A stretch of 62,005 nucleotides of DNA, filler included, from Sluysia triapertura (lineage: Eukaryota): NCBI GenBank assembly GCA_046118255.1. It is 5 parts of 5 records of this genome, joined end to end, with 100 filler letters (N's around TTAATTAATTAA, not from the genome) between each part and the next. Parts side by side here need not be neighbours in the genome. Positions count along the whole stretch, not along the records: positions 50,437 to 62,005 come from JBJNIA010183302.1; 4 more parts are not named here. One strand, 5' to 3'. This document shows, one piece after another, positions 4,491 to 62,005 of this stretch. Positions within the stretch are counted from its first letter, which is position 1. Every line of letters begins with the position of its first letter. The notes beneath the pieces are model-generated. The model worked only from the letters and a program-made list of their open reading frames with translations. It searched no databases and had not been told where the DNA came from. A program made the translations under genes and the position numbers.

Positions 4491-7400
4491 TAAGTCACAC
4501 ATTATGTTGCCGTAGGTTAAGTATTAGAAAAAGCATAGCACAACTATAAAAACTTCTATCAAAATATTATATTAAATGTTATTCAAACTGTAGGCTCAAT
4601 GACATAAATTTACAATGCTTTTCTATTATTGGATCTAATTTAAAATTAACTAAACAACACAAAATTTTATTAATTACAATCTTCATACTAAGGTTTCTAA
4701 ATATTCATCCAGAAAAATTATAATATAATTTTACACATTAAGAGAACATTTTAATAATTTAATAGTTTAAATATGATTTTGTATCTAGATTTAAACTAGA
4801 TTTCAAAGATTAAATCGATCTTAAGTATAATTGTTATATTCACTTAAGGAAGATAAAATCCTTTTTGGAGGATTTAAATTTATTTATAATTTTATCTAAT
4901 TTTAAATATAAATTACAATTTAATTTATTTGAAACGATTAAAATTTTAAACATTAACAAATTAAGAAATAAGTCAGGCTTAATGTCTTTTAAAAAATATA
5001 TTTCTTTTAAAACCAACATATTAACAAAATTTCACAACATTTTATTATGAAACGAGAGTAATACTATTAGAACAAAAAAACAGTAATAGAGTAATTATTA
5101 CTCTATTAATTCAGTAATAAAACACCTGGTAAAAGTTCCATTGGTAAGAATTTTTTGTATTCAGCTTTGAAATTTTGTTGAATATCACGGAAATCACCAT
5201 TAGCATAAATTCTTGCACAAACATTTTACATAATTCTAAATATCGATTTTTTTGAAATTTTTGCTCTTGACGACTAATTATTATTAATTTTTTTAATTTC
5301 AGAACTGGCAACAATAACGAGATCGTTAGTAGTAGTACTAGTTGTTGTTGTTGTTGTAGTAAATTGTGTTATCATTCTACATGAATAAAATTTCTTTAAG
5401 TTTTTGGGCCTCAGTAATTTTATCTATTATTTTACAAATAAAAGATAATAGATAAACAGATAACTGATTCAGAATATTCGATCGTGTATAAAAGGAAAAT
5501 AACAACAATTTAAGTATGACTAACAAAATTTAAATCTTATTGTTGGAATTTTTTCATTTGAAATGTCAGAAGTTTTCATTACTGTCGGATATTCTTTTAA
5601 TATCGAATTATGAATATTTTTATTGTCGTCTCGGAGTAAATAACCATTAACAGTTTAGCTTATGAAATTACTTTCCTTTTATTATTATTTAATTTTTTAA
5701 TAGGTATTTATATTAATTCATGAAAACAGGTTATTTTTTATTTTCACATTTTATATTAATTTTATTTTTTATTTTTATATTTTCAAGTATAAACGGCAAT
5801 TAATATTTTCAGATATTCGATCTCTTACAAAATTGATTTTAATGTTAGCTTTATCCTTGCAGTAAGAACTGGTAAAAAATTAAGAGTAAAATAATATAGA
5901 ATTAAAACTTACGATATTGACCAAATACCACCAAAATATATGTAAGTTGTGCAATATTCTAACGACGATTTGTAAGCACCAAAAACGTGAAATAAAGTCT
6001 TTCGAGTCACAATTCGACAAATAATTGATCTAGTCGAAAATTAATTTGGTTCTGATACTATTATTCGACATCGTAAGTAATCATAAATAATTTCCTTTTT
6101 TTGATGTTTATTAATCTATATTTTTTTGATTTGATTTGATTTGCCGTTAGCGCTAAATTAAAACTTTTTTGGTTGCTAAAGAACTAGCTACAAAAATTTT
6201 ATTACTTAGATATAAATTTAAATATTTTATTACTTTTAAATATAAAACTTTATTATTACTAAATAAATCTTAAAATTTAGACTTTTATGCGAGTCAGAAC
6301 GTACAGTCAAAGCGGTTTTTATGCGGGGAATAGGGACCATATAAAAAAACGCATGAAATATATGCCGAAATGGCTTTAAAATATTTTATATTGTAAACCA
6401 ATCAAAAAGCAATCACACAAAAGCAAGTATGACTCTATGGTAATATCTATATTAAAGGATTTCCGATGGTAATCTGTTAAATTATCCGTAGACAATCTGT
6501 TTGCTTATGTTGAGATAAAATAATATTTTATTTTAAATAAAAGTTTCACCCGATTTATAAAATATTGTCATAAAATAGTTTTAAAACTTTGTTTTTTTAT
6601 TTTTTTATCTGATTAAACTGAATTAATACTTCATCAGTAAGTTATTATGTGACTTCAGTTATTATTTTTCAACTTGAACTTGAATATTTTTAAAAGTTTT
6701 TCGAAATATAATTTAAATTGAAGTCGAATGTTTAACTTTATTCTGAAATATAATGAGGTTTAATTTTTATATTAATTAATTAGTTACGTAAATTATTTTC
6801 AATTTAAATAGGCATTGTTTAATAATAATATAATTTACTGCGTATTTATGCTAAATAAACCTATTAATATTATGGGTCCATCTACAGCTGGTCGAGGCAC
6901 AGTGACGGTAATGACAATAAATAAATATTTAAGTAATTTTAATTTTCAAAAATGTAAAAAGTTTTATAAAAAAATTTACCATCATCAAATATTCAACTGA
7001 AAAAAAACATATAAAATTAAATTTAAATTTAAAATCATTGTTTTAGAAATACAAGAAAGTGAAATTTTAAAATCAATGTTAATATCTGGCTAGTTTATTA
7101 CAAAATAGTCAGTAGTCAACTATGTATATGTGAATATTTACAGTGAATAATGTAGAAGAATAATATGGGTAGTAGGGGTAAATTACTCCAAATGACGTAA
7201 TTGTGAAATTCCTTTCACCGGATAATTTAAATAATAATTTAAATTATAATTTAGATGATAATTTAAATAATTTTTATTTTTAAAAATGAAAAAAGTTTAG
7301 TATAATGATTTACCACCACCGTACATTCAATTTGAAAAATAAACGTATTATTGTCTATTGCAGAATGTATAACTGTGTAAGGCAGTTATAAACTGTAGAA

Positions 7401-34928: not shown

Positions 34929-35162
34929 CCTCTTGTCGCCCGAATTAATTTTCAAATCTAATAAAAAATTTTCGAAATTACTACTTTCGAAATTACTTCC
35001 GGTAAATTGTTGTAATGAAAAGCTATTCAGTACCAGCTAAATATGTAGTATTAAATGAGTCGTAAACGCTACAGTGGGCTATAAGGGAATAAGTAAAGGC
35101 ATTTGTTCAATAAATTATAGTTTTCAGTTTGAGTCGTATACGACTCACCGGGCGACAAGAGG
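34929..35162. mobile_element. piggyBac-family MITE (234 bp)
   Basis: TTAA on both sides (34925-28 and 35163-66); perfect 14-bp TIR CCTCTTGTCGCCCG/CGGGCGACAAGAGG; subterminal palindrome GAGTCGTATACGACTC. Confidence 0.9.
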
Positions 35163-50436: not shown

Positions 50437-52932
50437 ATTTTTACATTTATTTATTTATTTTCTATATTGCAATTTACACCCGTCCTAATTTTATTCTATA
50501 ATATAGCTATATTTATATCAGTCTTACTGTTAATTCATGTTTTATTCCACTTCTATGATGTTTTTGCTTATTGTGTGCAGCTCTTGGATAATTAAGTATG
50601 ATGAGCTCTATTCTTCCTTATTATTTTTGAGTGTATTTATGAAATGTTTCTTTTCCATTTTCAAATTTCTAAATTTTTCTTGATTTTTTTGAGTTATTAA
50701 ATAAAATTTTATTTATTTCATTAAATATTGATCTAAAAATAAGTCAAGAAATAAGTGATTAATAATCGTTTAATCCTTAAATAAGTCGTTTAATGCTTTA
50801 AGTTTATTAAGTGTTTTAGCAAAATTATTTCAAATCCTAAGGTTGTTTGGTCAACCCAATCAATTTCGTAGAAAATACACCTTTTGAAGAGATTTTTCCA
50901 ATCAATACAATAAATAATGATGTGGATGCAGATATAGATGTAAAAACTGATTGAAAAGTATAAAAAATGATGCATCAAGTTTTGGACATAGTAATGTCGA
51001 CTATGGAGAAACTTATACAGTGGATTTTGAAAATATGCTTACAGTCGTTAAATTTTATTAAAAACGTAGGATATCTTAATAAGAAAATGAACAATGGAAT
51101 AGGTGCGGAATATTTTAATGAATACTATTCTTTCTTCACATTATTATTTGTATCTGAATTCGATATAAATCCAAACAATTAAATTTAGAAAAGGATTGAT
51201 AGTACCAACTCGATAATGAAATATAAGTAACTTTGGAGATTTATGCCTTTTGTGCTTGCATTATCAATAATTTATCTAGTTTTAATCTAGTATGTCTTAA
51301 TATGGTACTTTCTTTGTATAAACAAAGATGTGTCGGGTGACAATTACAAAGTTAATTATATAGAAAGTTTTATTATTAATGAAAGCGAATTATTAATTAA
51401 TAATAAATATTATGATAATATTAATAATAATAATATTGATAATAATAAATATTACAAGATAAAATTAGTACTTATGGATTTTTACCTAAACCTTGAAGCA
51501 AAATACTTTTAATTTAGAGGGTTCCGCTTACAATTCAGTATGCGAGTCTCTAATTTGAAATTTAACGGATCGTCTGTATGTGTGCTCAATAATCTTCTCA
51601 ATAAATGGAAACCTTAAATTTCATGCTTAATATGTAATTTACAAATAAATTAAAAAATTATAATTCCAACTAATTATAAACAAATTAAACAATGAAATTA
51701 ATATTTAAAGTACCAATTAACAAATTTATCTTCAACACAACTAAATAAAAAACCAATAAAAATTCAAATCAAACAACAATAAATATCGTACTACTAAAAC
51801 GCAGTAGAAATTTTTATTAGTTGTAGTTCATTTTATGGTTCTATATTAGTGAACCGAATCTTAATAATAGCAACAAATTATTAAAAATTTAGGACAAATT
51901 CCACTAAATTTCAATAGATTAATTTTCTCTCTCTCTCTCTCTGTCTTACCTCTTAATTTACTTATTCTATCTCTTTTGCCTTTATTAAAATGAAAAATTA
52001 ACTGTTCAAAAATAAAATTTAGTTAGAAATGTGTTGAATTAGTATTTATAAATACTGAATTTTTTAAGCTAACATTGTTATTATTATTATTATTATTAAT
52101 GTTATTATTTTATGATTATTATTATAGCATCTTTATTATTATTACTGTAATGACAACCTAACAGTATCACTTCTTTGTACAATCATTCAGTTCTCAAACA
52201 ATGCATTGCAGCTTGATTTTTGAGTCGAATTCTGACACTATTTATAGCGAGATATGTCATAATAGACTGCGGTGAATCAAAGTGAAACAAGAAACACACT
52301 CTCTATGATGAAGAATTATGACACCGATTGTGGAGTTAAACTGTGAGACAATTTATATTGCATTAGATTGTAAGAAATATAAATTTAAGTTTGATAAGCT
52401 TTTAAACACGTTAAATCGAGAGTTAAGTAATAAGGAATGACTAAAATAATTAAATTTTAATTAAGATTTTCCCTTTTTATATTCACGAGTTAAAATAACA
52501 TAAGATCTTAGTTTCCATTGATTCGTTTAATTCGTTTAATAATTACAGACTTTAGCCTACTCATCCAAGTTAAGGCTAAAAGCACCTATATAAACAAATA
52601 TTTTTTCCAATAATATGAAATCTCACAAATTTGAGATACCTTTGAAAGTGCTTCTTCGATATTAGAAATCATTTACCACTGAATTAAAACTTCTAAAACT
52701 CTGCAATTTTAAAAAATAATTCAGCTCGATTAAGTTTTAACAAACATCAAAAGGTCTTCAAATAGCTAATTTGATTTTGGATTTTTCTTGATACTGTTGA
52801 TTGATTTGTACTTATGATACTCCAAATTTTATTTCATTTTTTGTAAAATTGATTACAATGAATTTTTATATTACTTTAAAAGAAAACATTAAGTTTTTAA
52901 ATTGGTACATTTTATTTATTGAATTGTTTTAA

Positions 52933-55529
52933 CACGTTCGCTGCCGAGCGACACAGACACAAACTTCTACCTACGAGATAACTCATATGGAAGTGTGGTG
53001 GCCAACCTTTAACTCAAAATTCAAAATTCAGATATTCTAACATTTTACTTTCCCAGATCTATTCAAACCTTTTTACACGTCAAAACATTCTAAATTCACA
53101 ATTTTACAACATCAAAACTATATTTTCATTCAAACCATTAATGTACATTTCAAATTTCATTCAAAACATTTTTAACTTATAATTTTACAACATTAGAATT
53201 ACAATTTACGTGTCAAATTATCAAATATACATTTCAAAGTTTATCCAAAACATTTCAAGTTCACAATTCTTCAACATTCAATCATTAACATTAAACTCAC
53301 CCTTTAAAACCATTCAAAACATTCCAATCAAAAAGAACTTTTTTCTAAAGAATTTTATTTAAATTAATTAAATTAGCTAAAGAGAAAAAATTTTAAGATT
53401 TTAAAGAAAAGATCATGTAAGAATAAAGAAAGAATTTAAAAGAACAAAGTTCATGCGTTTTTATATTGTATATAATAATATTATTATTTAATTATTTTAA
53501 TTATTATTATTTTTAACATTTTTATTATCATCAATATTTTTATTAATTTTATTTCTGTCCATTTAGACAGATTATTTGTGCACAAATTGAATCTTTTAGT
53601 TGCTGTTTGCTTACATTGAAATTACCTGTCACCATTTCTCAATTGTCATTTCTGTTTAGACATACGTTTAGACAGCTTGAGATTAATATTAACTTACTCA
53701 ATTTGATTGGATGTCCAATCAATTCTACTTTCTTGTTTCACTATCAGTTTCTACCATTGGACGTCCAATCATAATCGATATCTCACAATTTGCACACTAT
53801 TTTTACGCAACTTTAAAAAAAATTTAAAAAAATATTAAATTAAAAAGAGTTAAAAAACTTACACGTTAAAAATTTTTTATGGCACTGAAAAGTAAAAAGG
53901 AGTACTCAAATTTTAGAGAAAATAATTTATGTAACATGATTAGACAAATTTTGGTTCAATTACGTAAAAAGTTAATAATCAGCTAAAGTCATCATCATCA
54001 ATGAGCAACGTTAAATGAGTACTTCTACAATAATTCTACAATGATAATTCGTTGTCAGTTATAACACTAAACCTTATTCAAATGTATATGAAAGTTTGTT
54101 ACCCTAAAATTGAATTAGAATATCGATTAAATTATTGCCTATTTTATGGAATGGCTTGAGAGAGATTCATAATCAAGTTCAAAAAGATTTTATTCCATAT
54201 TGATTCTTGCAAACATTACAAGTAAAAGTTAGAGATAGTAATCTAAAGGTATATGACTGCACAAGCATACCTTATCAACGATAATACATTGTTGAATTTA
54301 TCAAAATTAAGAGAAACTATACTGTAAGCGAATTACTTAATCGAATAAGAAATAATTTTACTGATAAAAAACATTCTCAATTATTTTCAATAAATACCTA
54401 TCGAATCCAATTGATACTAAAAATGGTGATTATATGTTAATCAAATTCGAAGAAGACATGAATTTCTTTCACATAATTCACATCTGTTTACGAGTATTCC
54501 CGGTTACCTTAACGAAGACCAGGTAAGTATGATTCTACAGAAGATAGATGTACAACATTGAGCATTGCTCTATCTAATCTTCATTCATATAATGTCGAAT
54601 TGCTTGTTAGTAAAGCTACAACACATTATTCAAAATGTATTCAACAGTCTTCATTTAACTACTATTCTTTTAACGAAATGAATGTTGCAAACAATCTTAC
54701 TCTCTCAGCAATCACAACATGAATCGCTATTGCTTCAAACCAACAGAAGTATAATTTTTTCCGAACAGTCCAATGTCCATTCTAATTGAATGAATTGAGT
54801 GAATGCTGTAAATTTGGACAATCTTGTTATTTTTATCATAATATCCAAGAAATACGTTATATTGGTGCTAATCAAAACATTATTAATGATTACTTAGATC
54901 GTGTAAATAATTTAGTAATGACCATTCAAGCTGATAAAGTCAAAGATGAGTTGACATTTAACAAAAATCATGCCGACTTCTTGGACAATACTCAATCTAT
55001 TAGCTCTATAGACGATCAAGAGTAATTTTTATTTTTTTTAATCAACACATATACAATTTTGATTATTTTTTTAAAGGAATTTACTGTCGGAGAAAGTCAT
55101 TAATTTTCGAAATACAAACAGCCCTTTCAATATCATAAATGACTCTATAACTTTTAATTTTAATATAATCTTTATGTTCAAGATAAATAAAAGTATTTCG
55201 ATGTTTGTCTTTTCGGTCATTTTGTTAATTATGAGAGATAAATACAAATCAATTAAATTAAATTTCTAAGTTAATTATAATTAATCTTAATGATATAGAT
55301 GATGTTAAAAACATAAATAAAGTATATAAACCTCCTTTCACACCAGAGAAAGTTGACATGTTAAATAACTTTTTTATTATTTTCTTATTAAAAATGACTT
55401 TAAATGGTATTGAATTTTTTAACTGCCAAAAAATACTACAACACCTTATCGAAAACTGATAATGTAAACACACCTGACTCAAAAGCCAGAACTGATCCGT
55501 CGCACATGTGCGACGGTGTAGCGAATATG
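52933..55529 (+). mobile_element. 2.6-kb non-autonomous piggyBac-ended element carrying a cargo gene
   Basis: TTAA at 52929-32 and 55530-33; imperfect TIR CACGTTCGCTGC versus CATATTCGCTAC (reverse complement of the right end); perfect 20-bp subterminal palindrome CCGTCGCACATGTGCGACGG; no transposase motifs recognised inside. Confidence 0.65.
53879..55025 (+). pseudogene. Decayed ORF with a CCCH (TIS11-like) zinc finger
   Basis: FRTVQCPF*LNELSECCKFGQSCYFYHNIQEIR has a KTELC-like lead-in and a C-x-C-x5-C-x3-H pattern followed by an ELR-like tail; upstream coding-like sequence is disrupted. Confidence 0.65.
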
Positions 55530-56095
55530 TTAAAATACTTTTTAAATAGAATCAATTTAACTATTTTTTATTTTAATTTAAAATGATACTGCACTTATTT
55601 AAGTAGGGCTATTACTAAATTGTTTATTAAAATCAAATCAAAGTCGAGTTACTATAAGAATTAAAATCAAGTTTCGCTGTATGATTTGCAAAATTCTTAT
55701 GCTATTTTTCTTTGTTCAGATTGTATAGTAATAAATAATTAATTTTCATCATATAAGATTCTTCCTATAATGAATATTTCACTGGCTAACCACTTGTATG
55801 TCGTGGATCATATGCTATGGCTCTAAAGCTGATTTCTACTATTTACTACTTAATTGCAATGCATTATATCGCTTTGATGTTTATAAAGATGTTTTTTCAT
55901 ATTATTAACTGTTTTCAATTATACGACATTTAGATATTATAAAGTGCTATATTAATATGTACAAGATTTACTAAAATACTTTTACTATATTTACAAATGA
56001 ATTCTTACAATATTCTTATTTAATACAATATTATTACTATGATATTGTTGAAATATTTATTATGCATGTAGCAATATTTAAAAATCTAGACTAAC

Positions 56096-56226
56096 CAAGC
56101 GACACTTCGAATTGATAATGGCACTGCTGCAGCATAAACAGCTAAATCTCCATATAAATATATGCAAATAACCAGATAAAAGAAAAATAAGCCAATCCTA
56201 TTAAAGTACGTCATTGCCATCTTTCC
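56096..56226 (-). CDS. TMEM104: TMEM104 (amino-acid-transporter-like membrane protein), internal exon
   Basis: tttag|GKMAMTYFNRIGLFFFYLVICIYLYGDLAVYAAAVPLSIRSVA(C)|gttagt; matches the TMEM104 hallmark GQMASMFFNKVG..LFY...VYLYGDLAIYAAAVP.SL..V.C. Confidence 0.9.
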
Positions 56227-57711
56227 CTAAATTAATGTTATTTTATTTAAAATGACAATAATTGTCAGAATTGTATATTAATATAAAATTAAATAATTGA
56301 AAGCTAAGAGTTAAGTGTAAGAGTCCCATATTACAAACATTATTTAAATAAAGAAATAAAATAGAGATTATTTTTCTTGTTCATATTAATATTGAAAATG
56401 TTTTCCACACTCTAACAAGGCCCTTTTCAATGACTGACACTTATATAACAATAAAAACACCATCTATTATACGACTGAAAACATAGAAAAGAATTTAAAA
56501 AAGTAGTAACAATAATAATAATAATGTAAAAATATGAAAAAACGAATGTTTGATGAATATTTCGAATGGTTGATAAATAAAAGTAGATATTTTGGGCATT
56601 ATTGTAAATATATTAACGAATGAATATTAAATTATTATATTATTAGTATAATATTATTGTTTAATAAACTATTAAACAATGAATGCAGGTGATTGATTAC
56701 TCTGAAATAAATATACATAAATTATTAAGTATTGTATGTTTGAATAGAAAAACAATTTAATGTAATAAATATTAAATTAAATGTTGTGAATAAATTTTAT
56801 ATTACATAAAGAATTTTCCAATGTATACATGTTTATACAAATAATTCTTAATGCAGAAACATTAATCAAGAATTATAATTGTACATAATTTTATATAATA
56901 CAAAAAACATAAATATTGGATGTTTGTAACAAAACCCTCACAAGTCAATTATCCAACTTGGTATATCATCGATTCAATATCTAATCATTGTGATCTTCAA
57001 TAACTTCTCTATAGTAGTGATCGATAACGACTACAGGACAATTTTCGATCTTGTTATAATATACATGAGTCGTTATTTTTATTATACTTAAGATATAAAA
57101 TTATTTGTAATTTCAATTAACGATTTATAAAATCTAGCTTCATTTGTATAATTAATGAATTACATGTTTAAACAAAGAAAGAAACCTTGTATAAATTTGT
57201 CAGTATATTACTCTTTTAAGTTTTGATTATTTTATGTGGGATTGAAAATTAATATTTAAACGTTTCGATTAATTTAGATAGAGACAAATAGTGTCCTCTA
57301 AGTTAAAGTTACATTAACTAGAATGGTTCATTTAAACCAAAGTGATAAACAAAACTTGATTTACATTAAGAATCATTAGATTAATAATTAAAATTTTAAA
57401 GTTTAATCAGCGAAGAATCATAAAAGATAAATATAAAGTTAACACTTGTTATAATAGTAAACGATTAAATAAATATAAATAAAGTTATCAGTTTTTACAT
57501 AAAACTTATTAAGAAGAAATCGAAAGTCCACAGTTTCATATTATCAGAAGTAAAGTAAATTTTGAAGAGTTAAAATCAAAAATGAATTAAGAATTAACAC
57601 GTGAGACTAAATAACTATCACCTTTAACTCCTTTAATAAATAATAAGTAATAATAATATTAATAATTTAAAATGTTAAATATAGGGAGTGGAACTTCCCA
57701 CACCAAATTGG

Positions 57712-58240
57712 CTAATAGTAAAGGCTACCGATTATGTGTGGATAGGTTGCATACTGTTTAATTGAAATTATATAATCAACAATATCTAAACGAATACTCT
57801 TGATTTTAGACAGTCGTTTCATCACCGTATCTGGGTCTGAACCAGTAGGCGATCTTGTGTGAACAAAAATTATAAGTTTTATAACATTATCAACATCTAA
57901 GCTAATAATCTCGATAAAATATACATCGTCTATCATATCCAAACCGATACATCGGTATATTATTCTGATTTTGAAATGCCACTTCGGTAACCCGAATGAT
58001 GTGAAACTCAGCATTTTGAAATTTGAAATCGGTTCGATTGATTCGTAGTGCATCACTACCTGAGCAAGGCAGACACGTTGATATACAATTCCGACTTTGA
58101 AGCGTAGGTTCATCATCGCATCTGGAGCCAAACCAGCAGGCGACCGAATCCCAACAACACCTGCTACGTCCAAACCGATACATCGAAACAGCATCGCGAT
58201 TCTTTTCAAAACATATTTGTAGCTTATGTTCGTCAGCATT
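57712..58240 (-). CDS. Hypothetical ORF with internal duplication, next to a piggyBac-like end
   Basis: Longest ORF in the window (about 175 aa from the first ATG), GC-richer than flanks, with repeated RCIGLD...RSP(A/T)G..PD..M units. Confidence 0.35.
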
Positions 58241-59400
58241 TTTTTTCGATATTTCAAAAATTAAGTTAAATAAAAAAAATTAAGTTAGTAACGTGATAAA
58301 CGCATTTACTTATTAGTTGCAGAAACGCCAACTATACATTATAAGACGTTTACTGTAACTGGACCCTGCTCAATTTTATTTTACCGTAGATTTAGCTTTA
58401 AGAAAACCACAGCAATTAACAATATTTCAATTATCTTATCTATACCAATAATTGTATTATATTAAATATTACATTACATTATCATGATCATCACTATCAT
58501 CATTATTGGATCACACAAAATATTGACTTTAAACAGAAACTTGAATCGATCTTAGATACGCTCTTAGATGTTGAAAACAATCTGGAATAGAGTTACAATT
58601 TCCTGGTAATCTTGTCAAACAGTTATTCCAACTATATTCACAATTTTTGTTTATTATTATTGTTTCCATTCTCATTTATTACAAAACCCCACTAATAATA
58701 ATTTTTTGTAATATTCATGTTGTTTATTTATTACTTTAAATTAAAATAAATTAAATTAATAAATTTAGTTGATACATATTAATTATCAATGACTCATTTA
58801 TTTTAAAATTAACAAATTTTACGAAATTCTTAATCGTTTATAAAATATTTCTTTATAATCGTTTTTGATGTTAAAAACGAAAGTACGGATAAAAATAGTT
58901 TTATTTCTCAAAAAATAAAACTAAGAAACTTTTATAAAGTTTTAATTTTAAGAAATGACAAATTTGAAGAAAAGTTTTATTCAAATTTTAAAATCAGATA
59001 TTGTACTTATGTTTGCAAATCTTTGTTAAATTCCAAATTATCAATAAATAATCAATTCCAATGCTTCTAAAAAAATCTTCAATAAACCAAATTATTAATG
59101 TTTACTACCAATACTCCAAAATAATTTTAATAAACGGTTAATGGTTAATTAATCGATAATTTTAAAGTAGTTCTACAAATATTTCCAAAACTTTGTCTCA
59201 CCGTATTTTATTATTTTAATTAAATTGATTTAAATTCTAATAAATCAATAGATTTCTTATTCGTTGTATCAGAAATTTCTTGCAAGATAACGTTTTTTGT
59301 GAATATTAGGTTTTTTTTGTTATTGTCGTTACGCCCACACGGTCTCTGAATTGAGGTGCATCAAGGAAAAAGATTCAAATTACAATGCTCATTTTTTTAG

Positions 59401-59667
59401 AATTACCGAACTAGTCAAAAGCTTTAGTTTGTTGACAACGATTTCTGGTAACAATAAAAGTAATTAATTCTTTTACCTATTGTGTTAATATTATAAATTA
59501 TTTTTGTTCTTCAGATAGCGCAACATTTAACTACATTGGAGACACGTGCAGAAGTCAGTGCTTAACATTTAAAATTTTTATAAATAAAATTTTATGTGAA
59601 TGTTATTTCTTATATTTTGAACAAAACTTTAAAGATTATTTTCAATTTGTATTTTTTAAAAAATAAA
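59401..59667 (+). CDS. Possible two-exon fragment of an unknown gene
   Basis: tttag|59401-59447|gtaaca...ttcttcag|59515 onward; the joined frame reads ITELVKSFSLLTTISDSATFNYIGDTCRSQCL...; no family recognised. Confidence 0.25.
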
Positions 59668-61244
59668 CCTTTAATAAAGTTCAATGGGTACTGTTTTAAT
59701 CTAAGACTAAGTAGCTGTTTTAACTTTAATCAAATGAATGTAATTTATAACTTTAAATTCATCAATCATCATCATTTACCACAACACAGACAATTTTATT
59801 AACTATAAATACAATGGAAGAAAGTAGTCAAATAGAAATAACAATAAAAATTGATATTTTGTAATCAAAATCCCAAAGGATCTTTTATTTTATCTTTTTA
59901 ATAATATTATTTGAATATAAAATTTTCCTTTCTGTAGAACAGAAATTAAATAAATGATTTTTCGTAAGATTTTATTATTTCAATCCGTAGGACTGAAGTG
60001 AACTTACTAAAATATAACTTACTGAATGTTTGCTAAAATGATAAATCAAATTCAGGTTGTTCTTCTAAAATTCCCTATTAATAAATTATCTGAATTATCT
60101 GCGGATGGTTGCAATGGCTCCAAACGATATAATTACTTGATATAATTATCTTCTAAATCGTTTTCTCTCTCGTTAAACAAAATGGCGATTATCACTAAAC
60201 TGATGCTAGTTCATATAGTTGTTATCAGTCAATAAGAACATTCTAGAAACTTCTTTCATATTTTTCCATTTTAGAAATTGACGATTTTAATAAATTTAAT
60301 AATTTGAGAGGGTTAAAATTCTTCTTTATTATTATTATTATTTATCTATTTATTTGGTTTTGCCTTGGTTTCGCTAATTGGTTTGCCTTTTTATATCAAA
60401 AATTAGATTTCGATGCTGTTGAGATATGCTCTGGCAAAATTATATTAATCTCGTAAGTTTGTTTTTTGCTTCACTTATCTGGAGTCGCCCGTTCACTCGT
60501 CGTAGATGGAGCGATGGAAGTGCAAAACTTAGTTTATGAGGCCTTAAATACTTTAGAATGTTAATGTTAAGTTGTCCAAATACCTTCGAAATAACGCCAA
60601 ATTGACACAAAAACTGTATTATTCAAAAAAGTAAAACGATTACGAAATAACACACAATTTTTCAATAAAAACACTGAATACGTTACAATTAATATGTTAT
60701 ACAAAATGTTTAGTTACAAAATCGTAAAAATCTTTAATAAATGTTTAATTACAAAACTCGAAGTACTCGTAATTACCTTACTGTTCTTAAAGAAAATGAT
60801 CAAATTAATCAAAGTTATTAATAATAAATTAATGTAATAAATGAGTCTTAAATTAAATACCTTGTTAGGAATGGTTAATTTCTCCTTACTAAAATCAACT
60901 GGATTGATTAACAATTGAAATCTTCTTCTTAGACAATTAAATCTTCTTCTAAAAATTGTACCTGTCAACCAAAATGCCTCTCTATTTATACCAGTTGTGT
61001 AATTACCTATAACTATTATTATTCGTTTGTAATTACTTTGTTCATTATTCTAATTGAAAATCCATTAAGTCTTTATTATTTTTCTTTAAAACTTATGCAT
61101 TATTATTATTTTAAATAAATAAAAATTAATCTAAATTGGAAATAAAACTATTTTAAATTAATTTAAATTGGAAATAAAATTGTATTTTTATTTTTTATTT
61201 TACTTACAATATTCTGATATATAATTAATCAATTAAAGCTTGCT

Positions 61245-62005
61245 TTAATTCTTGTGTGATACTATTTCCAGAATAGAATTATCAAGATTATTATCATCAT
61301 TATCATTTTCTTCAAAACTTTCATTTTCATAAATTTCTTGGAAAACTTCCTCATCCTCAGGGAAGTTGTAAAATGTTTAAGACTTTATGATTTAATTAGA
61401 AAATTTTTTGTGAAAGGTTTTGTTATGGGATGTTCATTATAATAAAATTAGGCATAATGAGTTAAATTTGTAAAATAATCGTGTTAACTCCAAAAATAAA
61501 AAACGCTAATGAAAGCTATAATTTAAAAATAAGTATAAGATTTCTGAACTTAATTCATATATGTTGCAGCTGAAGAATTTTCTGACTAATTAATCTTTCA
61601 AAACGTATTACGATAATTTTACAACTATAACAAACTCAAATAATACTTGTCACATAGGTAATTAACAGCTTTAGGAATTGAATTATGAAATTCAAAAAAA
61701 CTGATTTTAACAAAATATGGAATAAGGCTTATTGACTTAAATTTTCAATTATTTTCAGAGATAATACATAAAATACTTAACTAATTCATAAATTTCTATT
61801 ATTTCAAATAAACTACTTCCTATGTCTGATCTAACTTCACTGGCAAATGAAGTAGCATTTACAAGATTTTCTCTCGAATCATTAATTAATTCTTCTAAAT
61901 AGAAATTAAATAATAAATTTTTTAAAACCTGTTTCTGTACCGTAATTTCGTTTATTTACTTCGGATTCATAATTATGATCAATAGTATGTAAGGATTGAT
62001 AAACA
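61245..62005 (-). pseudogene. Decayed spliced ORF with acidic tail, running off the window end
   Basis: YQSLHTIDHNYESEVNKRNYGTET|34-nt GT-AG intron (61928-61895)|EELINDSRENLVNATSFASEVRSDIG..., then stops, then FPEDEEVFQEIYENESFEENDNDD. Confidence 0.4.

What the first reader, a model, noticed from the sequence alone, without database searches (positions are those of the whole stretch)
52929..55533. Pack-type piggyBac: TTAA-flanked element carrying a CCCH zinc-finger gene instead of a transposase
Seen in sequence: matching imperfect TIRs with TTAA at both ends, a perfect 20-bp GC palindrome inside the right end like those in the bona fide piggyBac ends at 35130 and 38040, an ACATT-rich degenerate repeat block (53030-53330), two ATTGG-n4-CCAAT palindromes (53706, 53756) just before a ~380-codon decayed ORF ending in a TIS11-like CCCH finger. 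Established knowledge: gene capture is well known for Pack-MULEs, CACTA elements and Helitrons, and much less so for piggyBac. Inference: a piggyBac-mobilised cargo system; an RNA-binding cargo could act on host silencing or mRNA decay.
Basis: partly seen in the sequence, partly recalled or inferred. Interest (0 to 1): 0.7.

Follow-up and report, generated by a model that had tools for sequence, protein, structure and literature searches.

The report
TTAA-flanked transposon carrying a broken zinc-finger gene
This is a 2.6-kb cut-and-paste transposon of the piggyBac type that has no transposase gene and instead holds the decayed remains of a small gene with one TIS11-like CCCH zinc finger; whether the gene was captured and is spread by the transposon could not be tested here.

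Summary
These features are real and beyond chance:
- TTAA at both ends
- 16-nt imperfect terminal inverted repeats (13/16)
- a perfect 20-bp palindrome inside the right end
- an 81-84-bp degenerate tandem block
- two ATTGGAYGTCCAAT palindromes
- a CCCH finger of the TIS11 type

The same terminal sequence bounds a 218-bp TTAA-flanked MITE in an unrelated metagenome contig. The ends therefore belong to a genuine transposon family. They fit published piggyBac end rules and fail the Kolobok rule.

No stop-free piece of the element matches a transposase.

The "380-codon ORF" is overstated. Coding signal covers about 54200/54370-55022. It changes frame once and carries a TGA and a TAA, the TAA inside the finger. 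This copy is therefore broken under the standard code. Only the finger has relatives.

A second finger-like relic lies outside the element, which keeps open that the finger gene is simply resident DNA.

Verdict: a non-autonomous piggyBac-like element with a pseudogene passenger. "Pack-type piggyBac" is plausible but unproven. Interest is moderate to low.

The parts
52929..52932 (.). Left TTAA (target site / duplication)
   Evidence: Read directly. TTAA is the fixed target of this type of element, so identical flanks cannot by themselves prove that the two ends belong to one insertion.
52933..52951 (+). Left terminal inverted repeat CACGTTCGCTGC, overlapping a small palindrome TCGCT-GCCG-AGCGA (52938-52951)
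   Evidence: Its only partner with 3 or fewer mismatches is the inverted right end, with 0.09 expected. The first six bases CACGTT fit the piggyBac-like motif C[C/A/T][C/A/T][T/G/A][T/A/G][T/G/A] (PMC5381638).
53030..53330 (+). Degenerate tandem block: 81-84-bp units, about 3.5 copies, A/C/T-rich
   Evidence: the repeat finder families D1 and D2. Local blastn gives 75% over 118 bp at an offset of 81-84.
53706..53769 (.). Two 14-bp palindromes ATTGGAYGTCCAAT (53706-53719, 53756-53769), 50 bp apart, about 110-170 bp upstream of an ATG at 53879
   Evidence: 0.01 expected by chance. A promoter or protein-binding role is inferred, not tested.
54368..54522 (+). Stop-free stretch in the frame of base 54368 (52 codons to 54523), upstream part of the gene relic
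   Evidence: No family or homologue found.
54523..54547 (+). Frame change: either a 25-nt GTAAGT...TAG intron-like segment or a frameshift
   Evidence: Read directly. GTAAGT is expected about once per strand in 2.6 kb of this composition (my estimate from base composition), so the signal is not significant.
54549..55025 (+). Main ORF relic: 158 codons in the frame of base 54549, with an in-frame TGA at 54720-54722 and TAA at 54783-54785, ending at TAA 55023-55025
   Evidence: It has 2 stops where windows of this size in the piece average 13.4; only 0.44% of all windows have 2 or fewer. Codon-position bias is G1 0.24, A2 0.47, T3 0.45. Gln is coded 11 times by CAR and TAR occurs once.
54774..54839 (+). 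Single CCCH zinc finger, C-x10-C-x5-C-x3-H, followed by the NIQEIR tail (to 54857). The TAA at 54783 lies inside the finger.
   Evidence: phmmer against 1.84 billion proteins hits only multi-CCCH proteins, over query residues about 5-30. The best PDB matches are TIS11d 1RGO and tristetraprolin 1M9O. A local finger HMM scores it at i-E 2.6e-4.
55479..55494 (-). Subterminal motif CAGTTC..TTTTGA (read on the minus strand), shared with the metagenome MITE
   Evidence: Alignment A2. The same motif sits at the same distance from the end in L001.
55497..55516 (.). Perfect 20-bp palindrome CCGTCGCACATGTGCGACGG, containing TCGCA-CATG-TGCGA
   Evidence: In position and form it resembles the palindromic subterminal repeat bound by the cysteine-rich domain (CRD) of the T. 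ni piggyBac transposase (PMC5861402). This is a resemblance only.
55518..55529 (-). Right terminal inverted repeat (minus strand CATATTCGCTAC)
   Evidence: It matches the left end at 13 of 16 positions counting the TTAA.
55530..55533 (.). Right TTAA
   Evidence: Read directly.

Best explanation
The interval 52929-55533 is one copy of a non-autonomous, TTAA-specific cut-and-paste DNA transposon, most likely of the piggyBac superfamily.

Inferred mechanism: a transposase encoded elsewhere in the genome recognises the 5'-CAYRTTCGCTRC termini and the TCGCW-N4-WGCGA subterminal palindromes. It excises the element and re-inserts it at TTAA.

The interior is passenger DNA:
- a degenerate 81-84-bp tandem block;
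- a promoter-like pair of CCAAT-containing palindromes;
- the relic of a small gene, roughly 190-270 codons, whose only recognisable part is one TIS11-type CCCH zinc finger.

In this copy the gene is dead under the standard code. It has two in-frame stops, one inside the finger, and one frame break.

Shown: the ends, the palindromes, the repeats, the finger homology, the broken state, and the existence of the same end family elsewhere.

Inferred: the superfamily, mobilisation in trans, and that the gene relic travels with the element.
For: - The ends pair only with each other and are improbable by chance.
- Both ends start with C after the TTAA, and both fit the six-base piggyBac-like end motif and the 12-19-bp TIR length (PMC5381638).
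- Kolobok, the other TTAA superfamily I checked in the literature, has 5'-RR..YY-3' termini (PMC9587614). These ends read 5'-CA..TG-3'.
- A metagenome contig from a less A+T-rich, eukaryote-like source carries a 218-bp TTAA-flanked MITE (L001:5973-6190). It has the same TIR and the same subterminal CAGTYC..TTKGA motif, and neither its second end nor that motif was part of the search pattern.
- No Pfam family, including the piggyBac transposase domain, matches any stop-free piece of 38 aa or more that was scanned.
- The ORF relic is strongly stop-depleted and shows codon periodicity.
- The finger is homologous to CCCH fingers of the TIS11/TTP type.
Against: - Only one copy was seen. Copy number in the source genome, polymorphic empty sites and a cognate transposase could not be examined.
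- TTAA flanks are uninformative about whether the two ends belong to one insertion.
- The TIRs match at only 13 of 16 positions, and the left end lacks the CAGTYC motif.
- Transposase remnants were sought only piece by piece, which is insensitive.
- A second finger-like relic outside the element (59324-59356) shows that CCCH relics also occur in flanking DNA.
- The genetic code of the organism is not known. If TAA is read as Gln, the finger is intact and only the TGA and the frame change remain.
Confidence: 0.6

Rival explanations
1. True Pack-type piggyBac. The family has captured a host CCCH gene or gene fragment and amplifies it. Other copies carry an intact, expressed ORF that affects mRNA decay or silencing.
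For: - The structure is that of a TIR element without a transposase but with a gene-like insert that has promoter-like palindromes upstream.
- The finger is a cellular-type domain.
- A CCCH relic elsewhere in the piece shows that such genes exist in this genome as possible parents.
Against: - No second copy, parent gene or expression was seen.
- This copy is broken.
- Outside the finger the ORF has no relatives.
- There is no similarity between the ORF and the outside relic beyond the motif.
Confidence: 0.2
2. The CCCH relic is resident DNA. Either the two ends come from separate insertions, each having lost its inner end, or a composite formed around a decaying local gene family. On this reading the 2.6-kb unit never moved as one piece.
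For: - TTAA flanks cannot tie the ends together.
- The ends differ at 3 of 16 positions and in their subterminal sequence.
- A second CCCH-tail relic lies 3.8 kb outside the element.
Against: - No other TIR-like end, even with 4-5 mismatches and the GC-rich core, exists in the 11.5-kb piece. Each end would therefore have had to lose its partner completely.
- The ends are correctly inverted.
- At 2.6 kb, the spacing is the typical size of piggyBac-like elements, which average 2.8 kb (PMC5381638).
Confidence: 0.12
3. The organism is a ciliate and the interval is a germline-limited, TTAA-bounded eliminated sequence or transposon. It would be removed precisely by a domesticated piggyBac transposase, and the ORF would be read in a non-standard code.
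For: - G+C is 23%.
- The TTAAC ends resemble the Tetrahymena TPB6-dependent TTAACACTT ends (PMC5766162).
- A 25-nt GTAAGT..TAG segment would suit ciliates with tiny introns.
- With TAA read as Gln the finger is intact.
Against: - The ends TTAACACGT and TTAACATAT violate the required TTAACHCTW motif at positions shown to be essential.
- In the ORF, Gln is CAR 11 times and TAR occurs once.
- The ORF stops at a TAA followed by A+T-rich non-coding-looking sequence.
- Another 182-codon ORF in the piece avoids all three stop codons.
- A TGA remains in frame.
Confidence: 0.08

Closest known systems
Non-autonomous piggyBac-like elements (PBLE derivatives and piggyBac MITEs)
   Same: TTAA flanks. Short TIRs starting with C that fit the published six-base motif. 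Asymmetric subterminal repeats and palindromes. A size near the PBLE mean. No transposase of its own.
   Different: The interior is not a deleted transposase gene, as far as could be seen. It is an unrelated gene relic with a CCCH finger plus a tandem repeat block. The cognate autonomous element is unknown.
Pack-MULEs / Pack-TYPE elements (gene-fragment-carrying non-autonomous TIR transposons, mainly in plants)
   Same: TIR-bounded, transposase-free, with an interior that looks like a cellular gene.
   Different: A different superfamily. The two defining proofs, a parent gene elsewhere and evidence of transposition or multiple copies, are missing here.
T. ni piggyBac ends (13-bp TIR plus a 19-bp internal repeat with inverted TGCGT/ACGCA motifs, bound by the transposase's cysteine-rich domain)
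   Same: A short TIR followed within about 15-35 bp by a palindromic motif of 5-bp inverted arms (TCGCW-N4-WGCGA here), with the two ends built asymmetrically.
   Different: The sequence differs, the arm spacing is 4 bp rather than 7 bp, and binding was not tested.
TIS11/ZFP36 (tristetraprolin) tandem zinc-finger proteins
   Same: The finger core CKFGQSCYFYH with the following xxxE(I/L)R tail and a preceding RTVQC lead-in resembles (R/K)YKTELC...CKYGxKCQFAHGxxELR.
   Different: There is only one finger, the first spacing is C-x10-C rather than C-x8-C, the rest of the protein has no relatives, and the reading frame is interrupted.
Tetrahymena TPB1/TPB6-dependent TTAA-bounded IES
   Same: TTAA-bounded, ends begin TTAAC, a few kb long, and may contain ORFs.
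   Different: The required TTAACHCTW motif is not met at either end, and there is no evidence that the organism is a ciliate.

Membership tests
piggyBac superfamily (as a non-autonomous member) | Insertion at TTAA with TTAA on both flanks | tested here: met
   TTAA at 52929-52932 and 55530-55533. Duplication as opposed to pre-existing TTAAs cannot be told apart.
piggyBac superfamily (as a non-autonomous member) | TIRs of 12-19 bp beginning with C; first six bases C[C/A/T][C/A/T][T/G/A][T/A/G][T/G/A] (PMC5381638) | tested here: met
   CACGTT and CATATT both fit. The 12-nt TIR after the TTAA matches at 9 of 12 positions, or 13 of 16 with the TTAA.
piggyBac superfamily (as a non-autonomous member) | A cognate autonomous element with the same ends that encodes a DDD transposase (Pfam DDE_Tnp_1_7) | not testable with these tools
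   No transposase domain in the element or in the rest of the piece. The source genome was not searchable. Scans of the metagenome, genome and viral collections gave only a MITE and chance hits.
piggyBac superfamily (as a non-autonomous member) | Precise excision restoring a single TTAA | not testable with these tools
Kolobok superfamily | TTAA duplication with termini 5'-RR ... YY-3' (PMC9587614) | tested here: not met
   The termini are 5'-CA ... TG-3'.
Pack-type (gene-capturing) non-autonomous TIR element | TIR-bounded, no transposase, interior of non-transposon gene origin | tested here: inconclusive
   The ends and the absence of a transposase are met. The interior carries a cellular-type CCCH finger, but the rest has no relatives.
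Pack-type (gene-capturing) non-autonomous TIR element | An identifiable parent gene elsewhere in the genome, and more than one copy or a polymorphic insertion | not testable with these tools
   Only one run holds the sequence. The exact and word-based protein look-ups were empty.
TIS11/ZFP36 family | Two tandem C-x8-C-x5-C-x3-H fingers 18 residues apart, each with a (R/K)YKTELC lead-in | tested here: not met
   There is one finger only, with C-x10-C spacing. The finger HMM found no second finger in any frame of the element. Similarity is limited to the finger.
Tetrahymena-type TTAA-bounded precise IES | Terminal motif TTAACHCTW at both ends (PMC5766162) | tested here: not met
   TTAACACGT and TTAACATAT differ at positions 7-8, which are essential in the mutational scan.

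The most novel reading that the evidence does not exclude
A piggyBac-type family whose non-autonomous members have captured a TIS11-like CCCH RNA-binding gene, complete with its own promoter-like palindromes, and spread it through the genome. Intact, expressed copies would exist elsewhere. This would be a 'Pack-piggyBac', a kind of gene capture so far documented mainly for MULE, CACTA and Helitron elements.
Probability: 0.18. Interest if true: 0.6.

Novelty: new member of a known kind. Interest (0 to 1): 0.35.

Why it matters
If the finger gene proves to be multicopy and always bounded by these ends, it would be a clear case of gene capture and amplification by a piggyBac-type transposon. That would show such elements can shuffle RNA-binding domains, much as Pack-MULEs do in plants.

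As it stands, the value is more modest. The finding defines a TTAA-specific end family (CAYRTTCGCTRC plus a subterminal palindrome) that occurs in at least two very different genomes. It also gives a worked example of a transposase-less copy with a pseudogene interior, which is useful for annotating repeats in this A+T-rich genome.

Tried and rejected
- Ciliate-code reading. Gln codon use and the TAA terminator argue for the standard code.
- Spliced model. A 25-nt GTAAGT..TAG segment joins the two frames neatly, but it is not significant. No GT..AG segment can remove the TAA from the finger without destroying it. The joined model was not built or searched as one sequence; exons were searched separately by reference.
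- Transposase remnant. Pfam scans of the 13 longest or ORF-region stop-free pieces (38-91 aa) of the element gave no credible family match and no transposase; three PDB searches found only CCCH-finger proteins.
- Paralogues and copy number. 
- Literature search for the end sequence returned only unrelated guide and primer sequences.
- The genome contigs and viral-contig scans gave only bacterial or viral chance matches.
- A search for a paralogous empty site, or any dispersed repeat, within the piece found none.
- Rfam and tRNA scans of the piece were empty.
No letters from them were sent to any search tool afterwards, and they were masked in local scripts.
Full report
**Material and limits**

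I had only the piece 50437-62005, which is 11.6 kb at about 23% G+C throughout.
- Only one coded sequencing run holds the interval.

**The ends**

The interval starts with TTAA (52929-52932) and ends with TTAA (55530-55533).
- The left 16-mer TTAACACGTTCGCTGC has exactly one other match with up to three mismatches in the window. It is on the opposite strand at 55518-55533 (TTAACATATTCGCTAC), where 0.09 matches are expected.
- Beyond these 16 bases the two ends share only scattered identities.
- A perfect 20-bp palindrome, CCGTCGCACATGTGCGACGG, lies at 55497-55516, one base inside the right repeat.
- The left end has a smaller palindrome, TCGCT-GCCG-AGCGA, at 52938-52951. Both ends therefore carry a TCGCW-N4-WGCGA motif.
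- No further end-like sequence exists anywhere in the piece, even when five mismatches are allowed.

**The same end family occurs elsewhere**

I scanned the metagenome contigs with a pattern built from the positions shared by the two ends. It returned two contigs, L001 and L002, which are the same locus at 96% identity.
- In L001 the match is the left end of a 218-bp element (5973-6190) flanked by TTAA on both sides.
- Its other end, which was not part of the pattern, is the inverted repeat TTAACATTCGCTACCAC.
- L001's left end has a subterminal inverted repeat right after the terminal repeat. All three of these ends then carry CAGTYC followed by TTKGA, at nearly the same distance as in the window's right end (alignment A2).
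- L001 is about 32% G+C and poor in long ORFs, so it looks eukaryotic and is clearly a different organism.

This shows that the window's termini belong to a real, TTAA-specific transposon family and are not a chance inverted repeat. Scans of the prokaryotic genome and viral collections gave only chance matches.

**Which superfamily**

- A survey of 157 piggyBac-like elements reports TTAA duplications and TIRs of 12-19 bp. It also reports an almost invariant first C, a first-six-base motif C[C/A/T][C/A/T][T/G/A][T/A/G][T/G/A], frequent subterminal direct or inverted repeats that are sometimes palindromic, and a mean size of 2.8 kb (PMC5381638). CACGTT and CATATT both fit the motif, and the 2.6-kb size fits.
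- Kolobok elements also duplicate TTAA but have 5'-RR..YY-3' termini (PMC9587614). These termini are 5'-CA..TG-3', so that signature is not met.
- In T. ni piggyBac, the transposase's cysteine-rich domain binds inverted TGCGT/ACGCA motifs in a subterminal repeat 17-33 bp from the left end (PMC5861402). The TCGCW-N4-WGCGA palindromes here occupy the equivalent place. This is a resemblance, not a test.
- From memory, some Sola elements also use 4-bp sites. I could not check this.
- The defining proof is a cognate element encoding a piggyBac transposase, and it is out of reach with the data I had.

**The interior**

- From about 53030 to 53330 there are about 3.5 degenerate copies of an 81-84-bp unit.
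- Two 14-bp palindromes, ATTGGAYGTCCAAT, sit 50 bp apart at 53706 and 53756, with 0.01 expected by chance. Each contains CCAAT on both strands, and they lie 110-170 bp upstream of an ATG at 53879. A promoter role is an inference.
- No stop-free piece of the element that I scanned matches any Pfam family credibly, so no transposase relic was detected. The test is insensitive because the pieces are short.

**The ORF**

There is no single 380-codon frame.
- Three-base periodicity is absent from 53590 to about 54340 and rises to significance only across 54790-55240.
- In the frame of base 54549, the 158 codons up to 55022 contain two stops, a TGA at 54720 and a TAA at 54783. Windows of that size in the piece average 13.4 stops, and only 0.44% have two or fewer.
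- Upstream, a 52-codon stop-free stretch (54368-54523) lies in another frame. The two frames are joined either by a 25-nt GTAAGT..TAG segment (54523-54547) or by a frameshift.
- Further upstream, from about 54200, the first frame is again moderately stop-poor: 8 stops in 274 codons.

**The finger**

Codons 54774-54839 read C-x10-C-x5-C-x3-H, with the TAA at 54783 inside the first spacer.
- The 79-residue piece that starts just after that TAA finds ten proteins at E up to 1e-3 among 1.84 billion, the best at 7e-13.
- All five of the hits that I scanned are multi-finger CCCH proteins. The matches cover only query residues about 5-30, i.e. CKFGQSCYFYHNIQEIR.
- Against solved structures, the best matches are TIS11d (1RGO), a cytoplasmic zinc-finger protein (6NZL) and tristetraprolin (1M9O).
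- The language-model look-alike search also points to zf-CCCH, as a lead only.
- The finger is therefore genuine and of the TIS11 type. But there is only one, its first spacing is longer than in TIS11, and nothing else in the ORF has relatives. It is not a member of the TIS11 family.

**Genetic code and state of the gene**

The low G+C raised the possibility of a ciliate germline with TAA/TAG = Gln. Several observations argue against it:
- In the best-supported 158 codons, Gln is CAA or CAG eleven times, and TAA appears once.
- The ORF ends at a TAA followed by A+T-rich sequence that looks non-coding.
- Another 182-codon ORF in the piece (57715-58260, minus strand) avoids all three stop codons.
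- The ends do not meet the TTAACHCTW motif required for precise excision in Tetrahymena (PMC5766162).

I therefore read the gene in the standard code, in which this copy is a pseudogene. No GT..AG segment can remove the TAA without destroying the finger.

**A complication**

The C-terminal half of a TIS11-type finger, C-x-[FYW]-x-H-x3-E-[LIV]-[RK], occurs a second time in the piece. It is CRYAHTVSELR at 59324-59356, 3.8 kb outside the element. None of 400 simulated sequences contained even one such motif. The pattern was chosen after I had seen the first hit, so the statistic is generous. There is no end-like sequence near the second motif, and it has no similarity to the element's ORF beyond the motif itself.

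This cuts both ways. It shows that CCCH genes or relics exist in this genome as possible parents for a capture. It also shows that a CCCH relic between two transposon ends need not be cargo.

**Conclusion**

My best reading (about 0.6) is a non-autonomous piggyBac-like element, mobilised in trans, whose interior includes a dead single-finger CCCH gene. The alternatives are:
- resident DNA flanked by ends that do not act together: about 0.1;
- a ciliate eliminated sequence: below 0.1.

Noticed in passing
window 59324-59356 (+): A second TIS11-type finger tail (CRYAHTVSELR) lies outside the element. The motif C-x-[FYW]-x-H-x3-E-[LIV]-[RK] occurs twice in the piece and in none of 400 simulations. 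There are no transposon ends nearby, and it has no similarity to the element's ORF beyond the motif.
   Followed up: partly
window 57715-58260 (-): A 182-codon ORF free of all three stop codons sits in a 36% G+C island. It contains an internal repeat of about 60 bp (57794-57852 and 58083-58143, 73% identity). It has no Pfam family, no homologue and no Rfam match.
   Followed up: partly
window 60337-61686: This region shows three-base periodicity and a stop-poor window on the minus strand (60537-61049), suggesting another coding relic. No Pfam family matches it.
   Followed up: partly
L001:5973-6190 (and L002:643-851): A 218-bp TTAA-flanked MITE with TIRs TTAACACGTTCGCTACCAC and TTAACATTCGCTACCAC and a subterminal hairpin, in a metagenome contig of about 32% G+C that looks eukaryotic. 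L002 is the same locus at 96% identity with a small indel inside the MITE.
   Followed up: partly
window 54523-54547: A 25-nt GTAAGTATG...GATAG segment whose removal joins two stop-free frames exactly; the TAA at 54524-54526 overlaps its GTAAGT. It could be a tiny intron, which would say something about the organism, or just a frameshift.
   Followed up: partly
It lies in the A+T-rich spacer between the repeat block and the palindromes. It was left out of all later searches.
   Followed up: no
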